The notes under the pieces are model-generated. The model saw only the letters and a list, made by a program, of their open reading frames with translations. It was not told the origin of the DNA and searched no databases. DNA of 64,000 nt from positions 401,260 to 465,259 of IMG/VR virus record IMGVR_UViG_3300034072_000926; one strand, 5' to 3'. This document shows, piece by piece, positions 6,197-62,472 of this stretch. The position numbers were made by a program, and so were the translations under genes. The first letter of the stretch is position 1. The number at the start of each line of letters is the position of its first letter.

Positions 6197-6480
6197 AGTT
6201 TGCCAGTCATCCTTAGACGCTTGGCACGACGATAGGCCCAGGAACGAAACTTCTTCAGCTTTGCATCACGAGCAATCCAGTTCTTAGTCAGTCGGACCTT
6301 CTCACGATCATACGGGAAGGTTGCCTGCTTCACTCTCTCATATTCTTCCTTAGAAGGGAAGGCGCAGCTATAACGACCGTGGGGACGACGTTCCTCGACA
6401 ATCTTCCAGAACCGCCGGAGATAGTCCTGTCGATTCCACCGAATTAAAGTCTGAGCAATCGAAAGCGGTGTAAGCGTCAC
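6193..6480 (-). CDS. hypothetical basic protein
   Basis: 95-aa ORF, 4-nt overlap with next gene. Confidence 0.6.
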   Translation of the reverse strand: MTLTPLSIAQTLIRWNRQDYLRRFWKIVEERRPHGRYSCAFPSKEEYERVKQATFPYDREKVRLTKNWIARDAKLKKFRSWAYRRAKRLRMTGKL

Positions 6481-6484
6481 AGAT

Positions 6485-6694
6485 TTATCCGTCTAATTTA
6501 TGGGCCAATACATCAGCTTGTTCAGCCAGATTGAGCGCACCGAACTTTGTCCATAGCGCGGCCTTCTGAAGCGAGTCAACACCTTTTTGACCCATCTTCT
6601 CAAGTTCAGACATGGGAAGATTGCGAATGCTCGCAATGATCACGCCTTCACTATCAAGGGTCAAATCGATCGTTATGACGGGTTTATCGCTCAC
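6485..6694 (-). CDS. hypothetical protein
   Basis: 69-aa ORF (GTG start) in tight gene run. Confidence 0.55.
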   Translation of the reverse strand: MSDKPVITIDLTLDSEGVIIASIRNLPMSELEKMGQKGVDSLQKAALWTKFGALNLAEQADVLAHKLDG

Positions 6695-7979: not shown

Positions 7980-8599
7980 TCAGAATCCTTAACATCCAGG
8001 CGAGCCGAGAACTTCTCGATCATCACGCTAACATCCTGGAACAACTGCTCGTCACCATCCTTCAGACCGGGCAGCACATCAGCCTTTTCCTGCACCCACT
8101 TGCGGGCAAAACCGGGGTCATTGGCAACAATGCTGGGCATGTTGGACTTGATGTCGGCGAGCTTGACAGTCTGCCGCTCCGGCGTTGCCCGCCAGGCATG
8201 CTCCTTGTCAATGTCCTTCCGAACCTTGCGATTCCCGTCGGACAGCTGACTCACGTCAGTTACCTCGTAGACACCGGTCACAATCTGGCTCGCGACATCA
8301 TCGCCAAACCTCTTGCCGAACGCCTCACGGATATCACCGAGTCCCTTGTGGGTATCCTCAACCACGTCATGCAACAGCGCAACAGCAATCGTCACGGAAT
8401 CGTTGTGCTTGGACAACGACACCATCTTTGCAACTTGGATAGGATGAACCTCATAGTGGGCACCACTATACTTGCGACGCTGGCCTCCCAGCTCAGGGTC
8501 AGGCTTCAGCGCATGATTGCGATGTGCGTCGATCATGAACTCCATCGCAAAAATCACGATGGAATCCTGCATCACGTCATATGTGGTCTCGTTTGTCAT
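7964..8599 (-). CDS. HD-domain protein, RelA/SpoT hydrolase-like (small alarmone hydrolase type)
   Basis: DAH..QRRKYSG..YEVHP, ALLHDVVEDT, VKLADIKSN motifs. Confidence 0.85.
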   Translation of the reverse strand: MTNETTYDVMQDSIVIFAMEFMIDAHRNHALKPDPELGGQRRKYSGAHYEVHPIQVAKMVSLSKHNDSVTIAVALLHDVVEDTHKGLGDIREAFGKRFGDDVASQIVTGVYEVTDVSQLSDGNRKVRKDIDKEHAWRATPERQTVKLADIKSNMPSIVANDPGFARKWVQEKADVLPGLKDGDEQLFQDVSVMIEKFSARLDVKDSDWELV

Positions 8600-23819: not shown

Positions 23820-24268
23820 GCAGCGAGAACCTGGCGGACGACCGCGCTGGCCTTGGCCTTGTCGAGCGAGGTGCCGAAAGTTGTGGACAGATGTGCCATG
23901 ATGGCGCCCATCTGCTTCATGGTCTTCTCGGGCAGCGTCGCAGCAAAGGTCTCAGCTTCGCCACGGATGTCGTCCTCGCTTGCCATCTGCGGCAGCAGCG
24001 ATTCCAGCATGGCCAGTTCGCGGATGCTCTGCTCATGATCGGGCTTCAGCGCCAGCGTGTCGTTGACCTGTTTGATCGACTTCTGGATTGCACGGAGCGC
24101 GTCCTCATCAGTGACCACAGCCGACGCAGGATCCTGCTTCAGCTTGACCACAGTTTCCTTCGCGTTCGCAGTGGCCAGTGCCTGAACCGCCTGGAACGAG
24201 CCGGCCAGCGGGTCGCGAGTCTTCCGCAGCTCGAGGGTTTTTGCGTTCAACGCGGCGAGAATACTCAC
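23816..24268 (-). CDS. GatB/YqeY domain protein
   Basis: TDEDALRAIQKSIKQ..ELAMLESLLPQM..KQMGAIM..ASAVVRQVL. Confidence 0.8.
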   Translation of the reverse strand: MSILAALNAKTLELRKTRDPLAGSFQAVQALATANAKETVVKLKQDPASAVVTDEDALRAIQKSIKQVNDTLALKPDHEQSIRELAMLESLLPQMASEDDIRGEAETFAATLPEKTMKQMGAIMAHLSTTFGTSLDKAKASAVVRQVLAA

Positions 24269-24708
24269 TTCGTGTCTCCTTCTTCGTATTCGATTGTGAC
24301 CTTAACGTCCAAATCGCTATACAGGCTTTTGAGCCTATTGCAAGCATTTAGGACAGATTCTTTCTTCCTGAATTGCTTGGCTTGGTTCTGATCGTCAACG
24401 AGCTGCGGCAACCGCCGACCAGTGTATTGCTTCTCAATGACGTTCTCGGGACGCGCTAAGGGCTTGCGATAGCTTGCAAGGGTGCCTTTGCGTTCATGTC
24501 GAGCATGTTGTCGTCCATAACGCCTTACTGAATTATAGGAAGATCCTCGACGTGGATCATAAGGCTGACGATCAGGTAATATCGAGACCTCAATCGTCTC
24601 AGCCATTTCACCCGAATAGAACCGATGCCCTACCTTGATATAGAAGTAGGACCCCCTCGGTAGCTTCTCGTTGGCTTTAAGGCTATTGAGCTTTGACATA
24701 TGTCTCAC
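24265..24708 (-). CDS. hypothetical basic protein
   Basis: 147-aa ORF. Confidence 0.6.
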   Translation of the reverse strand: MRHMSKLNSLKANEKLPRGSYFYIKVGHRFYSGEMAETIEVSILPDRQPYDPRRGSSYNSVRRYGRQHARHERKGTLASYRKPLARPENVIEKQYTGRRLPQLVDDQNQAKQFRKKESVLNACNRLKSLYSDLDVKVTIEYEEGDTK

Positions 24709-57412: not shown

Positions 57413-57654
57413 TTGATTTGAATTGCCGCTTGTCTACATTCTTGGAGGGAATCAATAGAAGCCCGTCCATAAGAGTTCTTCATAATCGTATCAACACATT
57501 GGAGATAGAAATCCCTTGTGGATTTCTTATCAGCAATTAGCCTATCCGAATTGGTTGGCATATCGCATGAACCTAGGACGACTAGACATAAAAGAAGACC
57601 GAAACGAGCAGAAGTCATAAAGTGACTATACTGTCGTTTCGGTCTGAAAATCAA
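57409..57654 (-). CDS. putative lipoprotein
   Basis: LLLCLVVLGSC lipobox-like sequence. Confidence 0.55.
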   Translation of the reverse strand: MIFRPKRQYSHFMTSARFGLLLCLVVLGSCDMPTNSDRLIADKKSTRDFYLQCVDTIMKNSYGRASIDSLQECRQAAIQIK

Positions 57655-57658
57655 TTTG

Positions 57659-57737
57659 TCCTAGATGTAGGAATCGAACCTACTCGTCTTTCGAAACCCG
57701 TTATGAGCGGGCAGGCTCCCCATTCGCCTTATCTAGG
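57659..57737 (-). tRNA. tRNA with CAU anticodon and long variable arm
   Basis: CCTAGAT/ATCTAGG, GCCCG-CT CAT AA-CGGGT, 12-nt variable region, GTAGG-TTCGATT-CCTAC; A8; no CCA. Confidence 0.7.
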
Positions 57738-57742
57738 ATGTT

Positions 57743-57879
57743 GTGACGGGCAAGTAATCGCTAATGGAATTTAGCCGGCTGCTCTAACCACCTGAGCTAC
57801 ACCGGGCCCTAAGACCCGATGAAGGGAGTCGAACCCTCGACACGCTGGTTGGGATAACCCATCAACTACGGCCCGTCAC
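57743..57879 (-). ncRNA. Y RNA-like element enclosing a circularly permuted tRNA (AT-CCC-AA loop, U73)
   Basis: GTGACGGGCCG..GGGTTATC / T-arm / acceptor closed by TTAG / D-arm / CTTGCCCGTCAC. Confidence 0.8.
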
Positions 57880-57937
57880 GTGTTCTTGATATGGTAAAAG
57901 GGCACTGTTGTCAAGCGCCCTTTTACCATAATGATTA

Positions 57938-60863: not shown

Positions 60864-60953
60864 CGGGAAGCAGTGGAATTGAACCACTCACCTGTAGGGG
60901 TTATAGGTGCTCATAGCTTGAAGCCAGACTAGGACCATCCTAGCTTACTTCCC
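60864..60953 (-). tRNA. tRNA-Sec-like / allo-tRNA-like RNA, anticodon UCA
   Basis: GGGAAGT(A)/(T)GCTTCCC, 6-bp D-stem GCTAGG/CCTAGT with 5-nt loop, CT-TCA-AG, long variable arm CACCT/AGGTG, G73; anticodon stem weak. Confidence 0.7.
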
Positions 60954-61462: not shown

Positions 61463-61706
61463 TTTTGAGGGCAAGTTTTGTGCTGGCCTTTCTTCCGCTG
61501 CGTCTGCCAATTCCGCCACCTCGCCCATCAACTGCCTTGGATACAACAGCAATTATGATCTTGCGTATCCATTCTTGTCTTACTGTCCTAGGCGGATTTT
61601 AGCCGGAGACCTAGTCCAAGACAGATGGTGGGGAGGGAAGGACTCGAACCTTCATGACTTTAGTCCACGGTCTTACATCGATAACCCAGAACTTCGGCCC
61701 TCAAAA
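61463..61706 (-). ncRNA. Y RNA-like element enclosing a permuted tRNA-Tyr-like domain (GTA, long variable arm, A73-CCA)
   Basis: TTTTGAGGGCCGAAG..GGGTTATC, 3' half ending CCTCCCC-A-CCA, ~95-nt linker, 5' half GGCGAGG-TG-GCG..CGC, CTTGCCCTCAAAA. Confidence 0.78.
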
Positions 61707-61715
61707 CGATCTAAA

Positions 61716-61858
61716 AGTTCGACGGGCAAGTGTTGCGAAGGACCTTTTTCAGCGTCCTATCCACTAGACGATCCCCGCACAATGGAGCGGGGACTGGGAT
61801 TCGAACCCAGGTTTCCGGCTTGACATGCGATAACCCTTTGCTATCGGCCCGTCGAACT
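61716..61858 (-). ncRNA. Y RNA-like element enclosing a permuted tRNA (AT-GTC-AA loop, Gly-like acceptor, CCA)
   Basis: AGTTCGACGGGCCGA..GGGTTATC, T-arm CTGGG/CCCAG, TCCCCGC-T-CCA-TTGT-GCGGGGA, D-arm, CTTGCCCGTCGAACT. Confidence 0.82.
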
Positions 61859-61894
61859 AATGACTTTATACACTGGCATCTAACCAGTGTCAAG

Positions 61895-61963
61895 TGCTCT
61901 AGGAGGGATTCGAACCCACAAGAGTCGCTTTAGGAGAGCAACGTCCGTCCAGTCGGCTAGAGC
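61895..61963 (-). tRNA. tRNA-Arg(CCU)-like with shortened D region
   Basis: GCTCTAG/CTAGAGC, TTGCT-CT CCT AA-AGCGA; only 15 nt between acceptor and anticodon stems. Confidence 0.6.
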
Positions 61964-62356: not shown

Positions 62357-62361
62357 ATGGG

Positions 62362-62466
62362 TGACGAGCAAGTGGAGGATTCCGTGCGCTCCCAATTGAG
62401 CTAACCGTTGTTCGTGAACAACGATTGGAGTCGAACCAATGATAACGGAAGCCAATCGGCTCGTCA
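62362..62466 (-). ncRNA. YrlA-type Y RNA (T-arm, closed acceptor-like stem, D-arm, no anticodon)
   Basis: TGACGAGCCGA..CGTTATC-ATTGG-TTCGACT-CCAAT-CGTTGTT-CACG-AACAACG..GCTC/GAGC..CTTGCTCGTCA; compensatory change in the terminal stem. Confidence 0.82.
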
Positions 62467-62472
62467 TTTGTT

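What the first reader, a model, noticed from the sequence alone, without database searches (positions are those of the whole stretch)
57743..57879. Permuted tRNA whose acceptor stem is sealed by a UUAG tetraloop
Seen: CATCGGG-TC-TTAG-GG-CCCGGTG forms a 9-bp hairpin with no CCA. The 5' half keeps GCCGG-CT and the 3' piece keeps AT-CCC-AA-CCAGC, so joining at U33/C34 would give CU-CCC-AA with U73 (Gly-like). All three anticodon-bearing copies show A-T immediately before the triplet. Inference: an intermediate between a full permuted tRNA and a YrlA, possibly an uncharged anticodon-nuclease decoy.
Basis: partly seen in the sequence, partly recalled or inferred. Interest (0 to 1): 0.7.

Follow-up and report, generated by a model that had tools for sequence, protein, structure and literature searches.

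The report
Phage Y RNA with tRNA-like head
The "permuted tRNA" is real, but it is a YrlA-type Y RNA, the known tRNA-mimicking partner RNA of the Ro60 protein. It is one of at least eleven such RNAs in a 465-kb phage that also carries a Ro60 gene, so it is a new member of a known class rather than a new kind of molecule.

Summary
A T arm, a 9-bp hairpin sealed by UUAG with no CCA, and a D arm lie in permuted order. When the halves are rejoined, ARAGORN calls tRNA-Gly(CCC).

The two ends of the RNA form a 9-bp stem with a bulged C, an 8-bp upper stem and a GGGUUAUC motif. This is the Ro60-binding module of Y RNAs.

- The window is the last 64 kb of a 465,259-bp phage that encodes a full Ro60/Rsr (TROVE plus Ro60-vWA domains).
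- The phage carries at least 11 RNAs with this module, 10 of them interleaved with about 52 tRNA genes.
- A covariance model built only from bacterial RNAs encoded beside rsr scores the finding at 81.8 bits (E about 4e-17), the best hit in the genome.
- Two orthologues, one in the cultured Sinorhizobium phage Phosso, keep every helix through compensatory changes and keep a promoter -35 box at the same distance.
- The published description of YrlA already reads "circularly permuted tRNA with a closed acceptor stem".

The "anticodon" is not conserved, and its flanking A-U and C belong to the invariant UUAUC motif. Nothing supports the decoy idea.

Verdict: new member of a known kind, moderate interest.

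The parts
57743..57880 (-). Whole Y RNA (about 138 nt), YrlA type: Ro60-binding stem plus tRNA-like head
   Evidence: Model R1, built from bacterial rsr-adjacent RNAs, scores 81.8 bits, E 4.4e-17, at 57748-57874. Rfam gives RF01656 37.9 bits and RF02553 33.1 bits. Fold z = -3.54.
57871..57879 (-). Lower (terminal) stem, 5' strand GUGACGGGC. It pairs with 57743-57751.
   Evidence: 9 Watson-Crick pairs. Across 42 motif matches (a few of them chance or composite hits) there are 31 different 5' strands, all but one closed by 5-12 contiguous complementary bases.
57743..57751 (-). Lower stem, 3' strand GCCCGUCAC, preceded by the conserved ACUU
   Evidence: ACUUGCYC is present in all eleven paralogues.
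57867..57870 (-). Bulged C followed by GUA, completing GCCGUAG, the counterpart of the YrlA motif GNCGAAN0-1G and of vertebrate GGUCCGA
   Evidence: Read from the sequence. The motif definition is from PMC4201824. Paralogues carry GCCGAAG, GCCGAUAG or GCCGAAAG.
57859..57866 (-). Upper stem, 5' strand. It pairs with 57760-57767 (8 pairs, two of them G.U).
   Evidence: Identical in orthologue L017.
57849..57858 (-). 5' side of the internal loop, GUUAUCCCAA.
   Evidence: GGGUUAUC is present in ten of the eleven paralogues, and CCGUUAUC in the eleventh. UUAUC is a conserved loop motif of nematode sbRNAs and vertebrate Y RNAs (PMC4726728).
57844..57848 (-). Anticodon-stem-like helix, 3' strand CCAGC. 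It pairs with 57775-57779 (GCCGG) with one C.A mismatch.
   Evidence: In three orthologues the outer pairs covary (C-G, U-A, A-U at one end; C-G, A-U, C-G at the other) and the A.C mismatch is kept.
57822..57843 (-). Variable loop GUGUC followed by the T arm (GAGGG-UUCGACU-CCCUU)
   Evidence: The T stem is 100% paired in 17 members, with 4 of 5 pairs compensatory. The last variable-loop base, C, is kept in all three orthologues.
57800..57821 (-). Sealed acceptor hairpin: 9 bp (7-bp tRNA-length core plus 2) closed by UUAG, with no CCA
   Evidence: The 9-bp length is kept in all three orthologues although the sequences differ completely. The loops are UUAG, AUCACA and CUUUG.
57781..57799 (-). 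UA linker plus D arm (GCUC-AGGUGGUUA-GAGC), with A14, G15 and G18G19
   Evidence: Read from the sequence. The conserved features listed for YrlA are in 10.1101/312249.
57768..57774 (-). 3' side of the internal loop, CUAAAUU.
   Evidence: CU is kept in three orthologues. The A-rich remainder matches the family motif AAAACAUCC.
57886..57914 (-). Putative sigma-70-type promoter: TTGACA, 17 nt, TATCAA. It ends 6 nt before the first stem base.
   Evidence: An exact TTGACA or TTGACT lies at the same distance in orthologues L032 and Phosso L153 and upstream of three other paralogues. The simple scan tool did not list it because the last base of the -10 hexamer is A.
57658..57737 (-). Downstream tRNA (anticodon CAU, 13-nt variable region). 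It starts 5 nt after the Y RNA.
   Evidence: ARAGORN and Rfam tRNA, 43.6 bits. The same arrangement is in orthologue L032. Metatranscriptome contig X26 spans the junction, 57633-57807.
63733..63794 (-). Paralogue: short Y RNA without a tRNA-like head
   Evidence: R1 scores 34.2 bits.
62358..62467 (-). Paralogue: YrlA-like, with T arm, sealed acceptor and D arm. UUAUC occupies the variable-loop position.
   Evidence: Rfam YrlA 30.4 bits. R1 35.9 bits. Fold.
61716..61858 (-). Paralogue: tRNA-like Y RNA with a 7-bp sealed acceptor
   Evidence: R1 68.6 bits. Four orthologues in IMG/VR.
61463..61706 (-). Paralogue: long Y RNA whose acceptor 3' strand is followed by ACCA and a spacer of about 100 nt
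   Evidence: R1 47.0 bits.

Best explanation
The element is a phage-encoded Y RNA of the YrlA class, the non-coding RNA partner of the Ro60/Rsr protein.

Proposed mechanism, with the status of each step:
1. Transcription (inferred). It is transcribed from its own sigma-70-like promoter together with the tRNA that starts 5 nt downstream. RNase P cleavage at that tRNA's 5' end would set the Y RNA's 3' end.
2. Ro60 binding site (structure shown; binding inferred). The 5' and 3' ends pair into a 9-bp stem with a bulged C, then an 8-bp upper stem and the GGGUUAUC motif. This is the surface that the phage's own Ro60 ring is expected to bind.
3. tRNA-like head (shown by sequence and covariation). The rest folds as a tRNA L-shape entered through the anticodon stem: a 5-position anticodon-like stem, variable loop, T arm, a 9-bp acceptor hairpin closed by a tetraloop, and a D arm. 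All elbow-forming bases are in place.
4. Function (inferred by analogy). The head presents a tRNA elbow without an anticodon or a CCA end. As proposed for other Y RNAs, it would tether or gate Ro60 toward a tRNA-recognising or RNA-degrading partner, such as host PNPase, during infection.

The identity of the partner and the benefit to the phage are unknown.
For: The genome context:
- The window is the last 64 kb of a 465,259-bp virus record that encodes a 590-aa Ro60 (TROVE 150 bits, Ro60-vWA 173 bits). It matches D. radiodurans Rsr 2nvo at 1e-115 and vertebrate Ro60 at about 1e-107 to 1e-110.

Matches to known RNA families:
- Rfam's only matches to the element are Y-RNA families: nematode sbRNA RF01656 at 37.9 bits (cut-off 38), over the whole model, and YrlA RF02553 at 33.1 bits. 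The orthologue scores 39.0 on RF01656.
- The head is 79% identical to an unannotated stretch 142 nt downstream of the Ro gene of Mycobacterium phage Whirlwind.

The module is linked to rsr in bacteria:
- In bacterial genomes the same three-part signature was found at 26 loci. The 12 loci that also encode Rsr (tblastn, inside the fetched locus of up to 8 kb) look like real Y RNAs, nearly all with a T arm. The other 14 have no Rsr hit and look like chance matches in coding DNA.
- A covariance model built from eight of those bacterial RNAs scores the finding at 81.8 bits, E 4.4e-17, full length, the top hit in the whole genome. It also recovers the ten paralogues.

The family co-occurs with Ro60 in phages:
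- There are 11, 6, 5 and 4 copies in related phages, all on one strand, with 0-1 hits for the reversed-pattern control.
- TROVE is present in all 4 complete relatives tested, as well as in this genome.

Transcription signals are conserved:
- The -35 box sits at the same distance in three orthologues.
- The Phosso orthologue is followed directly by a rho-independent terminator.

Literature:
- YrlA crystal structure (10.1101/312249).
- A phage Ro60 with Y-like RNAs and host PNPase (PMC12135203).
Against: - No experiment shows that this RNA exists or binds Ro60.
- The RNA-library evidence is only short low-depth contigs. They extend 12-20 nt upstream of the predicted start, and DNA carry-over is not excluded.
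- The element lies about 328 kb from rsr, whereas published YrlAs were defined as lying within 4 kb of it.
- It fails Rfam's YrlA gathering score (33.1 against 69). The rsr-adjacent Whirlwind locus fails it too, at 38.3 bits.
- The 5' motif is GCCGUAG, one base off GNCGAAN0-1G. This turns the A-U pair next to the bulged C into U.U.
- Model R1 was trained on sequences picked with the same three short motifs, so part of its score is built in.
- The phage has no RtcB, so the RNA-repair-operon context known from Salmonella is absent.
Confidence: 0.8

Rival explanations
1. The same Y RNA, but the sealed acceptor is not the final form. RNase P cuts at the 5' side of the 7-bp acceptor core, the 3' side is trimmed and CCA is added. 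The result is a nicked two-piece RNA with a free tRNA-like 3' end, as shown for M. smegmatis YrlA.
For: - The core is exactly 7 bp and stacks on a 5-bp T stem, which is the RNase P measuring geometry.
- M. smegmatis YrlA, also with 7 bp, is cut by RNase P and receives CCA in vivo (PMC4201824).
- The phage encodes a CCA-adding-type nucleotidyltransferase.
- Other paralogue groups keep an encoded ACCA right after the acceptor 3' strand while the spacer varies.
Against: - In this orthologue group the helix continues 2 bp past the core.
- The total of 9 bp is kept in three orthologues with unrelated sequences and short 4-6-nt loops, and there is no CCA. This points to selection on the closed hairpin.
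- Paired -1/73 and -2/74 positions are generally poor RNase P contexts (established knowledge, not tested here).
Confidence: 0.15
2. A tRNA-shaped decoy that protects phage or host tRNAs from a tRNA-targeting defence nuclease, acting independently of Ro60.
For: - The head is a close tRNA mimic that cannot be charged.
- The phage invests heavily in tRNA supply and repair: about 58 tRNA calls, a T4 Rnl1-like and an Rnl2-like RNA ligase, and a CCA-adding-type enzyme.
- CU and AA flanking the anticodon-like stem are kept in three orthologues.
Against: - There is no closed anticodon loop. The 'loop' is an open internal loop whose bases largely belong to family-wide Y-RNA motifs.
- The triplet is not conserved.
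- The most constrained part is the Ro60-binding module, 100% identical between orthologues whose heads have diverged.
- The module is tied to rsr in bacteria and phages.
- A literature search found no precedent for such a decoy.
Confidence: 0.07
3. A true split or permuted tRNA gene. The Y-type stem is removed, the anticodon loop is ligated and the acceptor loop is opened, giving a working tRNA-Gly(CCC).
For: - The rejoined halves are called tRNA-Gly(CCC) by ARAGORN.
- The phage has no Gly-CCC tRNA.
- The phage encodes RNA ligases.
Against: - There is no CCA and no bulge-helix-bulge motif.
- The ends are locked in a 17-bp, sequence-conserved Ro-type stem.
- The 'anticodon' differs in the Phosso orthologue, and the spacing to the stem differs by 2 nt.
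- The acceptor helix is 9 bp and closed in all orthologues.
- The anticodon-like stem carries a conserved C.A mismatch.
- No phage tRNA is more than 69% identical to the rejoined sequence.
Confidence: 0.03
4. A decayed junction of two tandem tRNA genes (T arm of one, D arm of the next) with no function of its own.
For: - BLAST of the head mostly hits junctions of adjacent tRNA genes in other phages.
- The element sits in a dense tRNA array.
- The published origin model for YrlA is a dimeric tRNA transcript (10.1101/312249).
Against: - Every helix is maintained by compensatory change across three orthologues and 17 relatives.
- The flanks are not tRNA remnants. They are a conserved Y-RNA module with its own promoter.
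- No tRNA overlaps the element.
Confidence: 0.02

Closest known systems
YrlA RNAs of bacteria and mycobacteriophages (Salmonella YrlA, PDB 6CU1; M. smegmatis YrlA; Rfam RF02553)
   Same: - The order of parts is the same: Ro60-binding terminal stem, anticodon-like stem, variable loop, T arm, closed acceptor stem-loop, UA linker, D arm.
- The elbow bases are conserved.
- A Ro60 gene is in the same genome.
- The 7-bp acceptor core matches M. smegmatis YrlA.
- The head is 79% identical to the rsr-adjacent region of Mycobacterium phage Whirlwind.
   Different: - It lies about 328 kb from rsr, inside a tRNA array, with its own promoter and a tRNA 5 nt downstream.
- It scores only 33 bits on RF02553.
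- Its Ro module keeps both strands, a bulged C and GGGUUAUC.
- The acceptor helix is extended to 9 bp.
- The anticodon-like stem has 5 positions with a conserved C.A mismatch.
rsr-adjacent Y RNAs of Armatimonadota and Chloroflexota found here (loci L158-L183)
   Same: - They carry the same GGGCCG...GGGUUAUC...ACUUGCCC module, the same T and D arms and a closed acceptor.
- A model built from them scores the finding at 81.8 bits.
   Different: - They sit directly beside rsr in cellular genomes.
- Most have a small hairpin, rather than an open 5-position stem, between UUAUC and the T arm.
Thermus phage phiLo Ro60 with Yrl1 and Yrl2 (PMC12135203)
   Same: A phage-encoded Ro60 plus phage-encoded Y-like RNAs. 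The proposed action is capture of host PNPase in a RYPER-like complex.
   Different: - The phiLo RNAs lie just upstream of the Ro60 gene.
- There are two of them, not eleven.
- The passages read describe them only as stem-bulge-stem RNAs with a CGAA motif and mention no tRNA-like domain.
Nematode stem-bulge RNAs and vertebrate Y RNAs (Rfam RF01656; PMC4726728)
   Same: - A terminal helix with a single bulged C.
- G.U and A-U pairs next to the bulge, a bulge on the 3' strand, an upper stem, and a UUAUC motif at the start of the loop.
- The score is at the family's gathering threshold (37.9 here and 39.0 for the orthologue, against 38).
   Different: - This is a phage gene with a bacterial-type promoter and no oligo-U tail.
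- The loop is replaced by a complete tRNA-like domain.
- The resemblance may reflect shared constraints from Ro60 binding rather than direct descent.
Circularly permuted tRNA genes of the red alga Cyanidioschyzon merolae
   Same: The 3' half precedes the 5' half in one transcript, and the acceptor strands are joined by a short linker.
   Different: - Those genes yield working tRNAs through circularisation at a bulge-helix-bulge motif followed by RNase P and RNase Z processing.
- Here there is no such motif, no CCA, no conserved anticodon, and a conserved Ro-type stem at the ends.

Membership tests
YrlA-type Y RNA (Chen et al. 2014; Rfam RF02553) | The 5' and 3' ends pair, with the motif GNCGAAN0-1G near the 5' end | tested here: inconclusive
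   A 9-bp terminal stem is present. The motif reads GCCGUAG, one base off (U for the first A). Paralogues have GCCGAAG, GCCGAAAG or GCCGAUAG. Definition from PMC4201824.
YrlA-type Y RNA (Chen et al. 2014; Rfam RF02553) | T arm and D arm with tRNA-like loops, a UA linker, and a pyrimidine ending the variable loop | tested here: met
   T loop UUCGACU; D loop with A14, G15 and GG; UA linker; variable loop ending in C. All are kept in the orthologues. Criteria from 10.1101/312249.
YrlA-type Y RNA (Chen et al. 2014; Rfam RF02553) | A closed acceptor-like stem-loop between the T and D arms, with no free CCA end | tested here: met
   9 bp plus a UUAG loop and no CCA. All 7 core pairs show compensatory change across 17 relatives.
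YrlA-type Y RNA (Chen et al. 2014; Rfam RF02553) | Encoded within about 4 kb of the Ro60 gene and on the same strand | tested here: not met
   rsr lies at G000 129,219-130,991 (minus strand). The finding lies at about 459,002-459,139 (minus strand). The strand is the same but the distance is about 328 kb. This was a search criterion of the 2014 survey rather than a property of the molecule.
YrlA-type Y RNA (Chen et al. 2014; Rfam RF02553) | Reaches Rfam's gathering score (69 bits) | tested here: not met
   33.1 bits. The rsr-adjacent locus of mycobacteriophage Whirlwind also reaches only 38.3 bits, so the model is narrow.
YrlA-type Y RNA (Chen et al. 2014; Rfam RF02553) | Recognised by a model of RNAs that are encoded beside rsr | tested here: met
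   Model R1, from 8 bacterial rsr-adjacent RNAs, scores 81.8 bits, E 4.4e-17, full length, top hit in the genome. Caveat: the training set was picked with the same three short motifs.
YrlA-type Y RNA (Chen et al. 2014; Rfam RF02553) | Bound by Rsr/Ro60, and modified by TruB and DusA | not testable with these tools
   Needs immunoprecipitation, gel shift and modification mapping.
Metazoan Y RNA / nematode sbRNA (RF01656) | Terminal helix with a bulged C, a 3'-strand bulge, an upper stem, and UUAUC at the loop start | tested here: met
   Alignment to RF01656 over model positions 1-130. Features as listed in PMC4726728.
Metazoan Y RNA / nematode sbRNA (RF01656) | Reaches the gathering score (38 bits) | tested here: inconclusive
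   37.9 bits for the finding and 39.0 bits for orthologue L032:1390-1528.
Metazoan Y RNA / nematode sbRNA (RF01656) | Eukaryotic Pol III gene with an oligo-U 3' end | tested here: not met
   It is a phage gene with a TTGACA-type -35 box. It is followed by a tRNA, or by a rho-independent terminator in Phosso.
Functional permuted tRNA gene | Processing signals that free the acceptor ends (CCA or trailer) and join the termini (bulge-helix-bulge) | tested here: not met
   No CCA. A 4-nt loop on a conserved 9-bp helix. The termini lie in a 17-bp Y-type stem with no bulge-helix-bulge motif.
Functional permuted tRNA gene | An anticodon conserved among orthologues | tested here: not met
   CCC, CCC and CAA when read from the stem. 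The spacing to UUAUC differs by 2 nt.
tRNA (RF00005) | Detected as a tRNA in native order | tested here: not met
   There is no ARAGORN or Rfam tRNA call on 57743-57880. It is called only after artificial rejoining.

The most novel reading that the evidence does not exclude
These huge soil phages, relatives of the cultured Sinorhizobium phage Phosso, carry a modular Y-RNA toolkit.

- Up to eleven paralogues share one Ro60-binding module of the metazoan type: both strands, a bulged C and UUAUC.
- The paralogues carry different heads: none; a T arm only; a closed permuted tRNA, as in this finding; a cloverleaf with a closed anticodon-like hairpin; or a permuted tRNA with an encoded ACCA.
- They are wired into the tRNA array as tRNA-Y-tRNA transcripts.

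If this reading is right, one phage Ro60 could be aimed at several different partners. The series would also be living intermediates for the proposed birth of Y RNAs from tandem tRNA genes. Some members might be opened by RNase P and expose a chargeable CCA end.
Probability: 0.3. Interest if true: 0.65.

Novelty: new member of a known kind. Interest (0 to 1): 0.4.

Why it matters
What the tRNA-like domain of bacterial and phage Y RNAs binds, and what Ro60 does for a phage, are open questions.

- **The element itself.** It adds a well-supported member to the YrlA class.
- **A gap in earlier surveys.** Surveys that only looked within 4 kb of rsr and discarded hits in tandem tRNA regions would have missed Y RNAs like this one, which lie hundreds of kilobases away inside tRNA arrays.
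- **A gap in Rfam.** Rfam's YrlA model also misses this branch, including rsr-adjacent bacterial members.
- **A route to experiments.** An orthologue, currently unannotated, exists in a cultured phage of Sinorhizobium meliloti (Phosso). The predictions can therefore be tested directly in a tractable, harmless host.

Tried and rejected
**Expression from public RNA libraries.** Only short, low-depth contigs were found.
- Three libraries cover just the Y-RNA/tRNA unit and not the flanks.
- The contigs extend 12-20 nt beyond the predicted start, and one library is probably DNA.
- I draw no conclusion from this.

**More orthologues in IMG/VR.** Two further pattern scans gave only L017, one unrelated Y RNA (L091) and many ordinary tRNAs.

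**MAFFT alignments.** MAFFT misaligned the upper stem, the anticodon-like stem and the D stem across subfamilies, and the acceptor region of the two-sequence alignment. I compared those segment by segment in scripts instead.

**A recent tRNA ancestor.** None was found. The rejoined sequence is at most 69% identical to any of the 58 ARAGORN calls in the genome, which is the background level for tRNAs.

**The RtcB repair-operon context.** RtcB is absent from the genome.

**Megablast of the 9-kb region against cultured phages.** It gave only a 54-nt match.

**Literature.** Two review papers on bacterial Y RNAs were not held in the library. A search for tRNA-like decoys of anticodon nucleases found no precedent.

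**Complex prediction.** I did not run complex prediction for Ro60 with the RNA, because the tool gives no verdict for jobs that contain RNA.

**Bacterial pattern hits.** 14 of the 26 bacterial loci look like chance matches in coding DNA, with no Rsr hit, and I set them aside.
Full report
**1. What is in the sequence**

The feature lies on the minus strand, window 57880-57743. Read 5' to 3' it contains:
- a 9-base strand GUGACGGGC;
- a single C, then GU and A;
- an 8-base strand;
- GUUAUCCCAA;
- CCAGC;
- a 5-nt variable loop ending in C;
- a canonical T arm (loop UUCGACU);
- the hairpin CAUCGGGUC-UUAG-GGCCCGGUG;
- UA;
- a canonical D arm (GCUC-AGGUGGUUA-GAGC);
- A, GCCGG, CUAAAUU;
- the complement of the 8-base strand;
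- a 6-nt bulge, UU;
- the complement of the first strand.

In native order no tRNA is detected.

The RNA folds much better than shuffled versions, z = -3.54 with 0 of 200 shuffles as good. The cloverleaf-on-a-stem structure lies within 3 kcal/mol of the minimum free energy.

**2. What the ends are**

Rfam's permissive scan gives two matches to the element, and both are Y-RNA families:
- the nematode stem-bulge RNA family RF01656, at 37.9 bits (cut-off 38), across the whole model;
- YrlA RF02553, at 33.1 bits (cut-off 69).

The alignment to RF01656 shows shared features on both strands: ..CGG-CCG-AG..AUGG-UUAUC on the 5' side and ..CCAU..ACUUG-CCGU on the 3' side.

This is the Ro60-binding architecture described for Y RNAs: a terminal helix, one bulged C, a bulge on the opposite strand, an upper stem, and a UUAUC motif at the start of the loop (PMC4726728). 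It also corresponds, with one base changed, to the GNCGAAN0-1G motif of bacterial YrlA RNAs (PMC4201824).

**3. The genome**

The window is the last 64 kb of a 465,259-bp IMG/VR virus record that CheckV rates as complete.
- The record encodes a 590-aa Ro60/Rsr with TROVE and Ro60-vWA domains.
- That protein is very similar to D. radiodurans Rsr (1e-115) and to vertebrate Ro60 (about 1e-107 to 1e-110).
- The gene sits between the tail sheath and tail tube genes.
- There is no RtcB.
- The phage does have a CCA-adding-type enzyme, a T4 Rnl1-like ligase and an Rnl2-like ligase.

The closest cultured phage is Sinorhizobium phage Phosso (469 kb, host S. meliloti). Its Ro-like protein is 52.5% identical and it has the same sheath-Ro-tube order.

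**4. A family of eleven**

A motif scan of the genome finds eleven minus-strand RNAs with the same module: GCCG, 5-13 nt, then GGGUUAUC (CCGUUAUC in one), the head, then ACUUGCYC. Each is closed by its own complementary terminal stem.
- Ten lie in a tRNA array that runs across the contig end: 10 tRNAs at 456.9-464.3 kb and about 42 at 0.4-10.3 kb.
- One lies just upstream of rsr.

The heads differ:
- three are short hairpins;
- some have a T arm plus other hairpins;
- some are complete permuted tRNA-like folds, including this finding;
- one has an encoded ACCA after the acceptor 3' strand;
- one carries ACCA plus a spacer of about 100 nt.

Four have an exact TTGACA 34-40 nt upstream. Most of the others start within about 10 nt of an upstream tRNA's 3' end, and most are followed within a few bases by another tRNA.

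**5. Relatives**

The three-part signature occurs in several other huge phages (277-462 kb) and in some smaller ones.
- In five records the GCCG...GGGUUAUC pattern occurs 11, 6, 5, 4 and 4 times, always on one strand, against 0-1 for the reversed control.
- All four complete relatives tested have a TROVE gene.

In bacterial genomes the signature hit 26 loci.
- The 12 loci that look like real Y RNAs (Armatimonadota, Chloroflexota) all carry Rsr inside the fetched locus.
- The other 14 look like chance hits in coding DNA and have no Rsr.

A covariance model built from eight of these bacterial RNAs gives the following:
- 81.8 bits, E 4.4e-17, full length, for the finding, which is the best hit in the whole phage genome;
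- 86.7 bits for its orthologue;
- recovery of all ten paralogues;
- a hit on the rsr-adjacent YrlA region of mycobacteriophage Whirlwind.

The training set was chosen with the same short motifs, so the score is partly built in. The independent information is the linkage of such RNAs to rsr.

**6. Orthologues of this particular RNA**

Two were found:
- L017/L032, in a 462-kb IMG/VR phage;
- Phosso, about 24,426-24,559, unannotated in the GenBank record.

Between the finding and L017:
- the Ro module is 100% identical (32 nt on the 5' side and 25 nt on the 3' side);
- the head has diverged, with 3 of 9 identical bases in each acceptor strand;
- there are nine double compensatory changes and no broken pair.

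Across all three orthologues:
- the acceptor helix is 9 bp with unrelated sequences and loops of 4, 6 and 5 nt;
- the anticodon-like stem covaries at both ends and keeps the same A.C mismatch;
- the variable loop ends in C.

All three have TTGACA or TTGACT at the same distance from the first stem base. L032 keeps the odd downstream tRNA(CAU). Phosso instead has a rho-independent terminator right after the 3' strand. This argues for a discrete small-RNA gene whose ends are those of the Y stem.

Across 17 tRNA-like family members, the terminal stem, the T stem and the acceptor core show strong covariation.

**7. The "anticodon" question**

That motif is present in all paralogues, including those without any tRNA-like part.

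The AAAUU after CU corresponds to an A-rich strand (consensus AAAACAUCC) that faces UUAUC in most tRNA-like members.

In Phosso the five bases before the stem read CAAAA, not CCCAA, and the spacing from UUAUC is 2 nt longer.

What is conserved in all three is CU directly after the stem and AA directly before it, the consensus of tRNA positions 32-33 and 37-38. This is compatible with descent from a tRNA broken in its anticodon loop, as the published tandem-tRNA origin model would predict (10.1101/312249), or with a small structural role. It is not evidence for a usable anticodon.

**8. Comparison with what is known**

- They have variable acceptor, anticodon-stem and variable-loop sizes.
- They occur in phages.
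- In M. smegmatis, YrlA with a 7-bp acceptor is cut by RNase P and CCA-tailed (PMC4201824).
- A phage Ro60 with two Y-like RNAs forms a complex with host PNPase in vitro (PMC12135203).

The finding therefore belongs to a known kind. It differs in several respects:
- its location, 328 kb from rsr and inside a tRNA array;
- its own promoter and the tRNA 5 nt downstream;
- the two-stranded, UUAUC-bearing Ro module;
- the 9-bp closed acceptor;
- the conserved C.A mismatch.

The 2014 survey reported only hits within 4 kb of rsr and discarded hits overlapping tandem tRNAs. Rfam's model misses this branch. Such RNAs would therefore have been overlooked.

**9. Mechanism and confidence**

- Shown: the fold, its conservation, the family, the co-occurrence with Ro60, and the conserved -35 box.
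- Inferred: transcription, 3'-end formation by RNase P at the downstream tRNA, Ro60 binding at the terminal module, and a tethering or gating role of the tRNA-like head toward an unknown partner.

I put 0.8 on "YrlA-class Y RNA that partners the phage Ro60". Within that, about 0.15 goes to the variant in which RNase P opens the acceptor hairpin. The decoy, split-tRNA and junk readings are each below 0.1.

Expression could not be settled from public data.

Noticed in passing
G000 8198-8342 (= L009, minus strand); L011:4978-5123; L016:5463-5622; L019:2293-2437; Phosso from about 19,156 (L152); window 61463-61706: Two paralogue groups keep ACCA directly after the acceptor 3' strand, while the spacer before the 5' strand varies from 4 to about 100 nt. 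This looks like a permuted tRNA with an encoded CCA end. It could be opened by RNase P, as M. smegmatis YrlA is.
   Followed up: partly
G000 6449-6587 (L009); L016:5997-6134; L010:5878-6015; L022:2191-2332; L024:1399-1546: In other subfamilies a closed anticodon-arm-like hairpin follows UUAUC. It has a 4-5-bp covarying stem and a 7-nt loop, often CUUGAAA. The Y stem therefore enters between the D arm and the anticodon arm. ARAGORN and Rfam partly call one of these as a tRNA (27.6 bits).
   Followed up: partly
window 57658-57737 (-) and L032 orthologue: The tRNA 5 nt downstream of the finding has anticodon CAU but a 13-nt variable region, which is unusual for Met or Ile2 tRNAs. It is conserved in the 462-kb relative, where ARAGORN does not call it.
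   Followed up: no
window 40312-40388 (-); G000 222209-222282 (-); window 60865-60953 (-): There are two tRNAs with anticodon CUA (amber-suppressor type, labelled Pyl by ARAGORN). There is also a sub-threshold tRNA-Sec-like RNA with a UCA anticodon loop (36.2 bits, cut-off 47). Whether the phage reassigns stop codons was not examined. Long ORFs read normally under table 11.
   Followed up: no
window 63831-64000 (-), contig end: The 3' part of a tmRNA is cut by the end of the record. The tRNA and Y-RNA array continues at the start of the record (about 42 tRNAs in 0.4-10.3 kb). The 'linear' record is therefore probably a circularly permuted genome opened inside the array.
   Followed up: partly
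window 57893-57927, 63780-63830, 61860-61900 (-); G000 about 132,400-132,440: The promoter-like sites TTGACA-17 nt-TAnnnA lie in front of Y RNAs. In three cases the -35 box sits inside or beside a short palindrome. A further TTGACA-17-TAGAGT site at window 63009-62981 precedes a non-Y hairpin region (62975-62920).
   Followed up: partly
PV764938.1 (Sinorhizobium phage Phosso) about 19,160; 24,190-24,320; 24,430; 288,700; 420,442: The cultured phage Phosso has at least five unannotated Y RNAs in intergenic gaps. One lies upstream of its Ro-like gene. A tandem pair lies near 24.2-24.6 kb; the second member was found only by model R1 (53.6 bits).
   Followed up: partly
L032:1390-1528 (-): The phage orthologue passes the curated gathering score of a nematode sRNA family (RF01656, 39.0 against 38). 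An automatic annotation would label a phage gene as a C. elegans sbRNA.
   Followed up: yes
L168:1864-2209; L178:6589-6729 (Anaerolineae, Caldilineaceae): Some bacterial rsr-adjacent loci have a short second Y module nested inside or directly following a first one that carries only a T arm.
   Followed up: no
G000 132219-132391 (-), L008:6228-6384: The Y RNA next to rsr has no tRNA-like head, which makes it YrlB-like. It is conserved in relatives L031 and L058. It lies upstream of a 234-aa ORF with no Pfam match, and that ORF is followed by rsr.
   Followed up: partly
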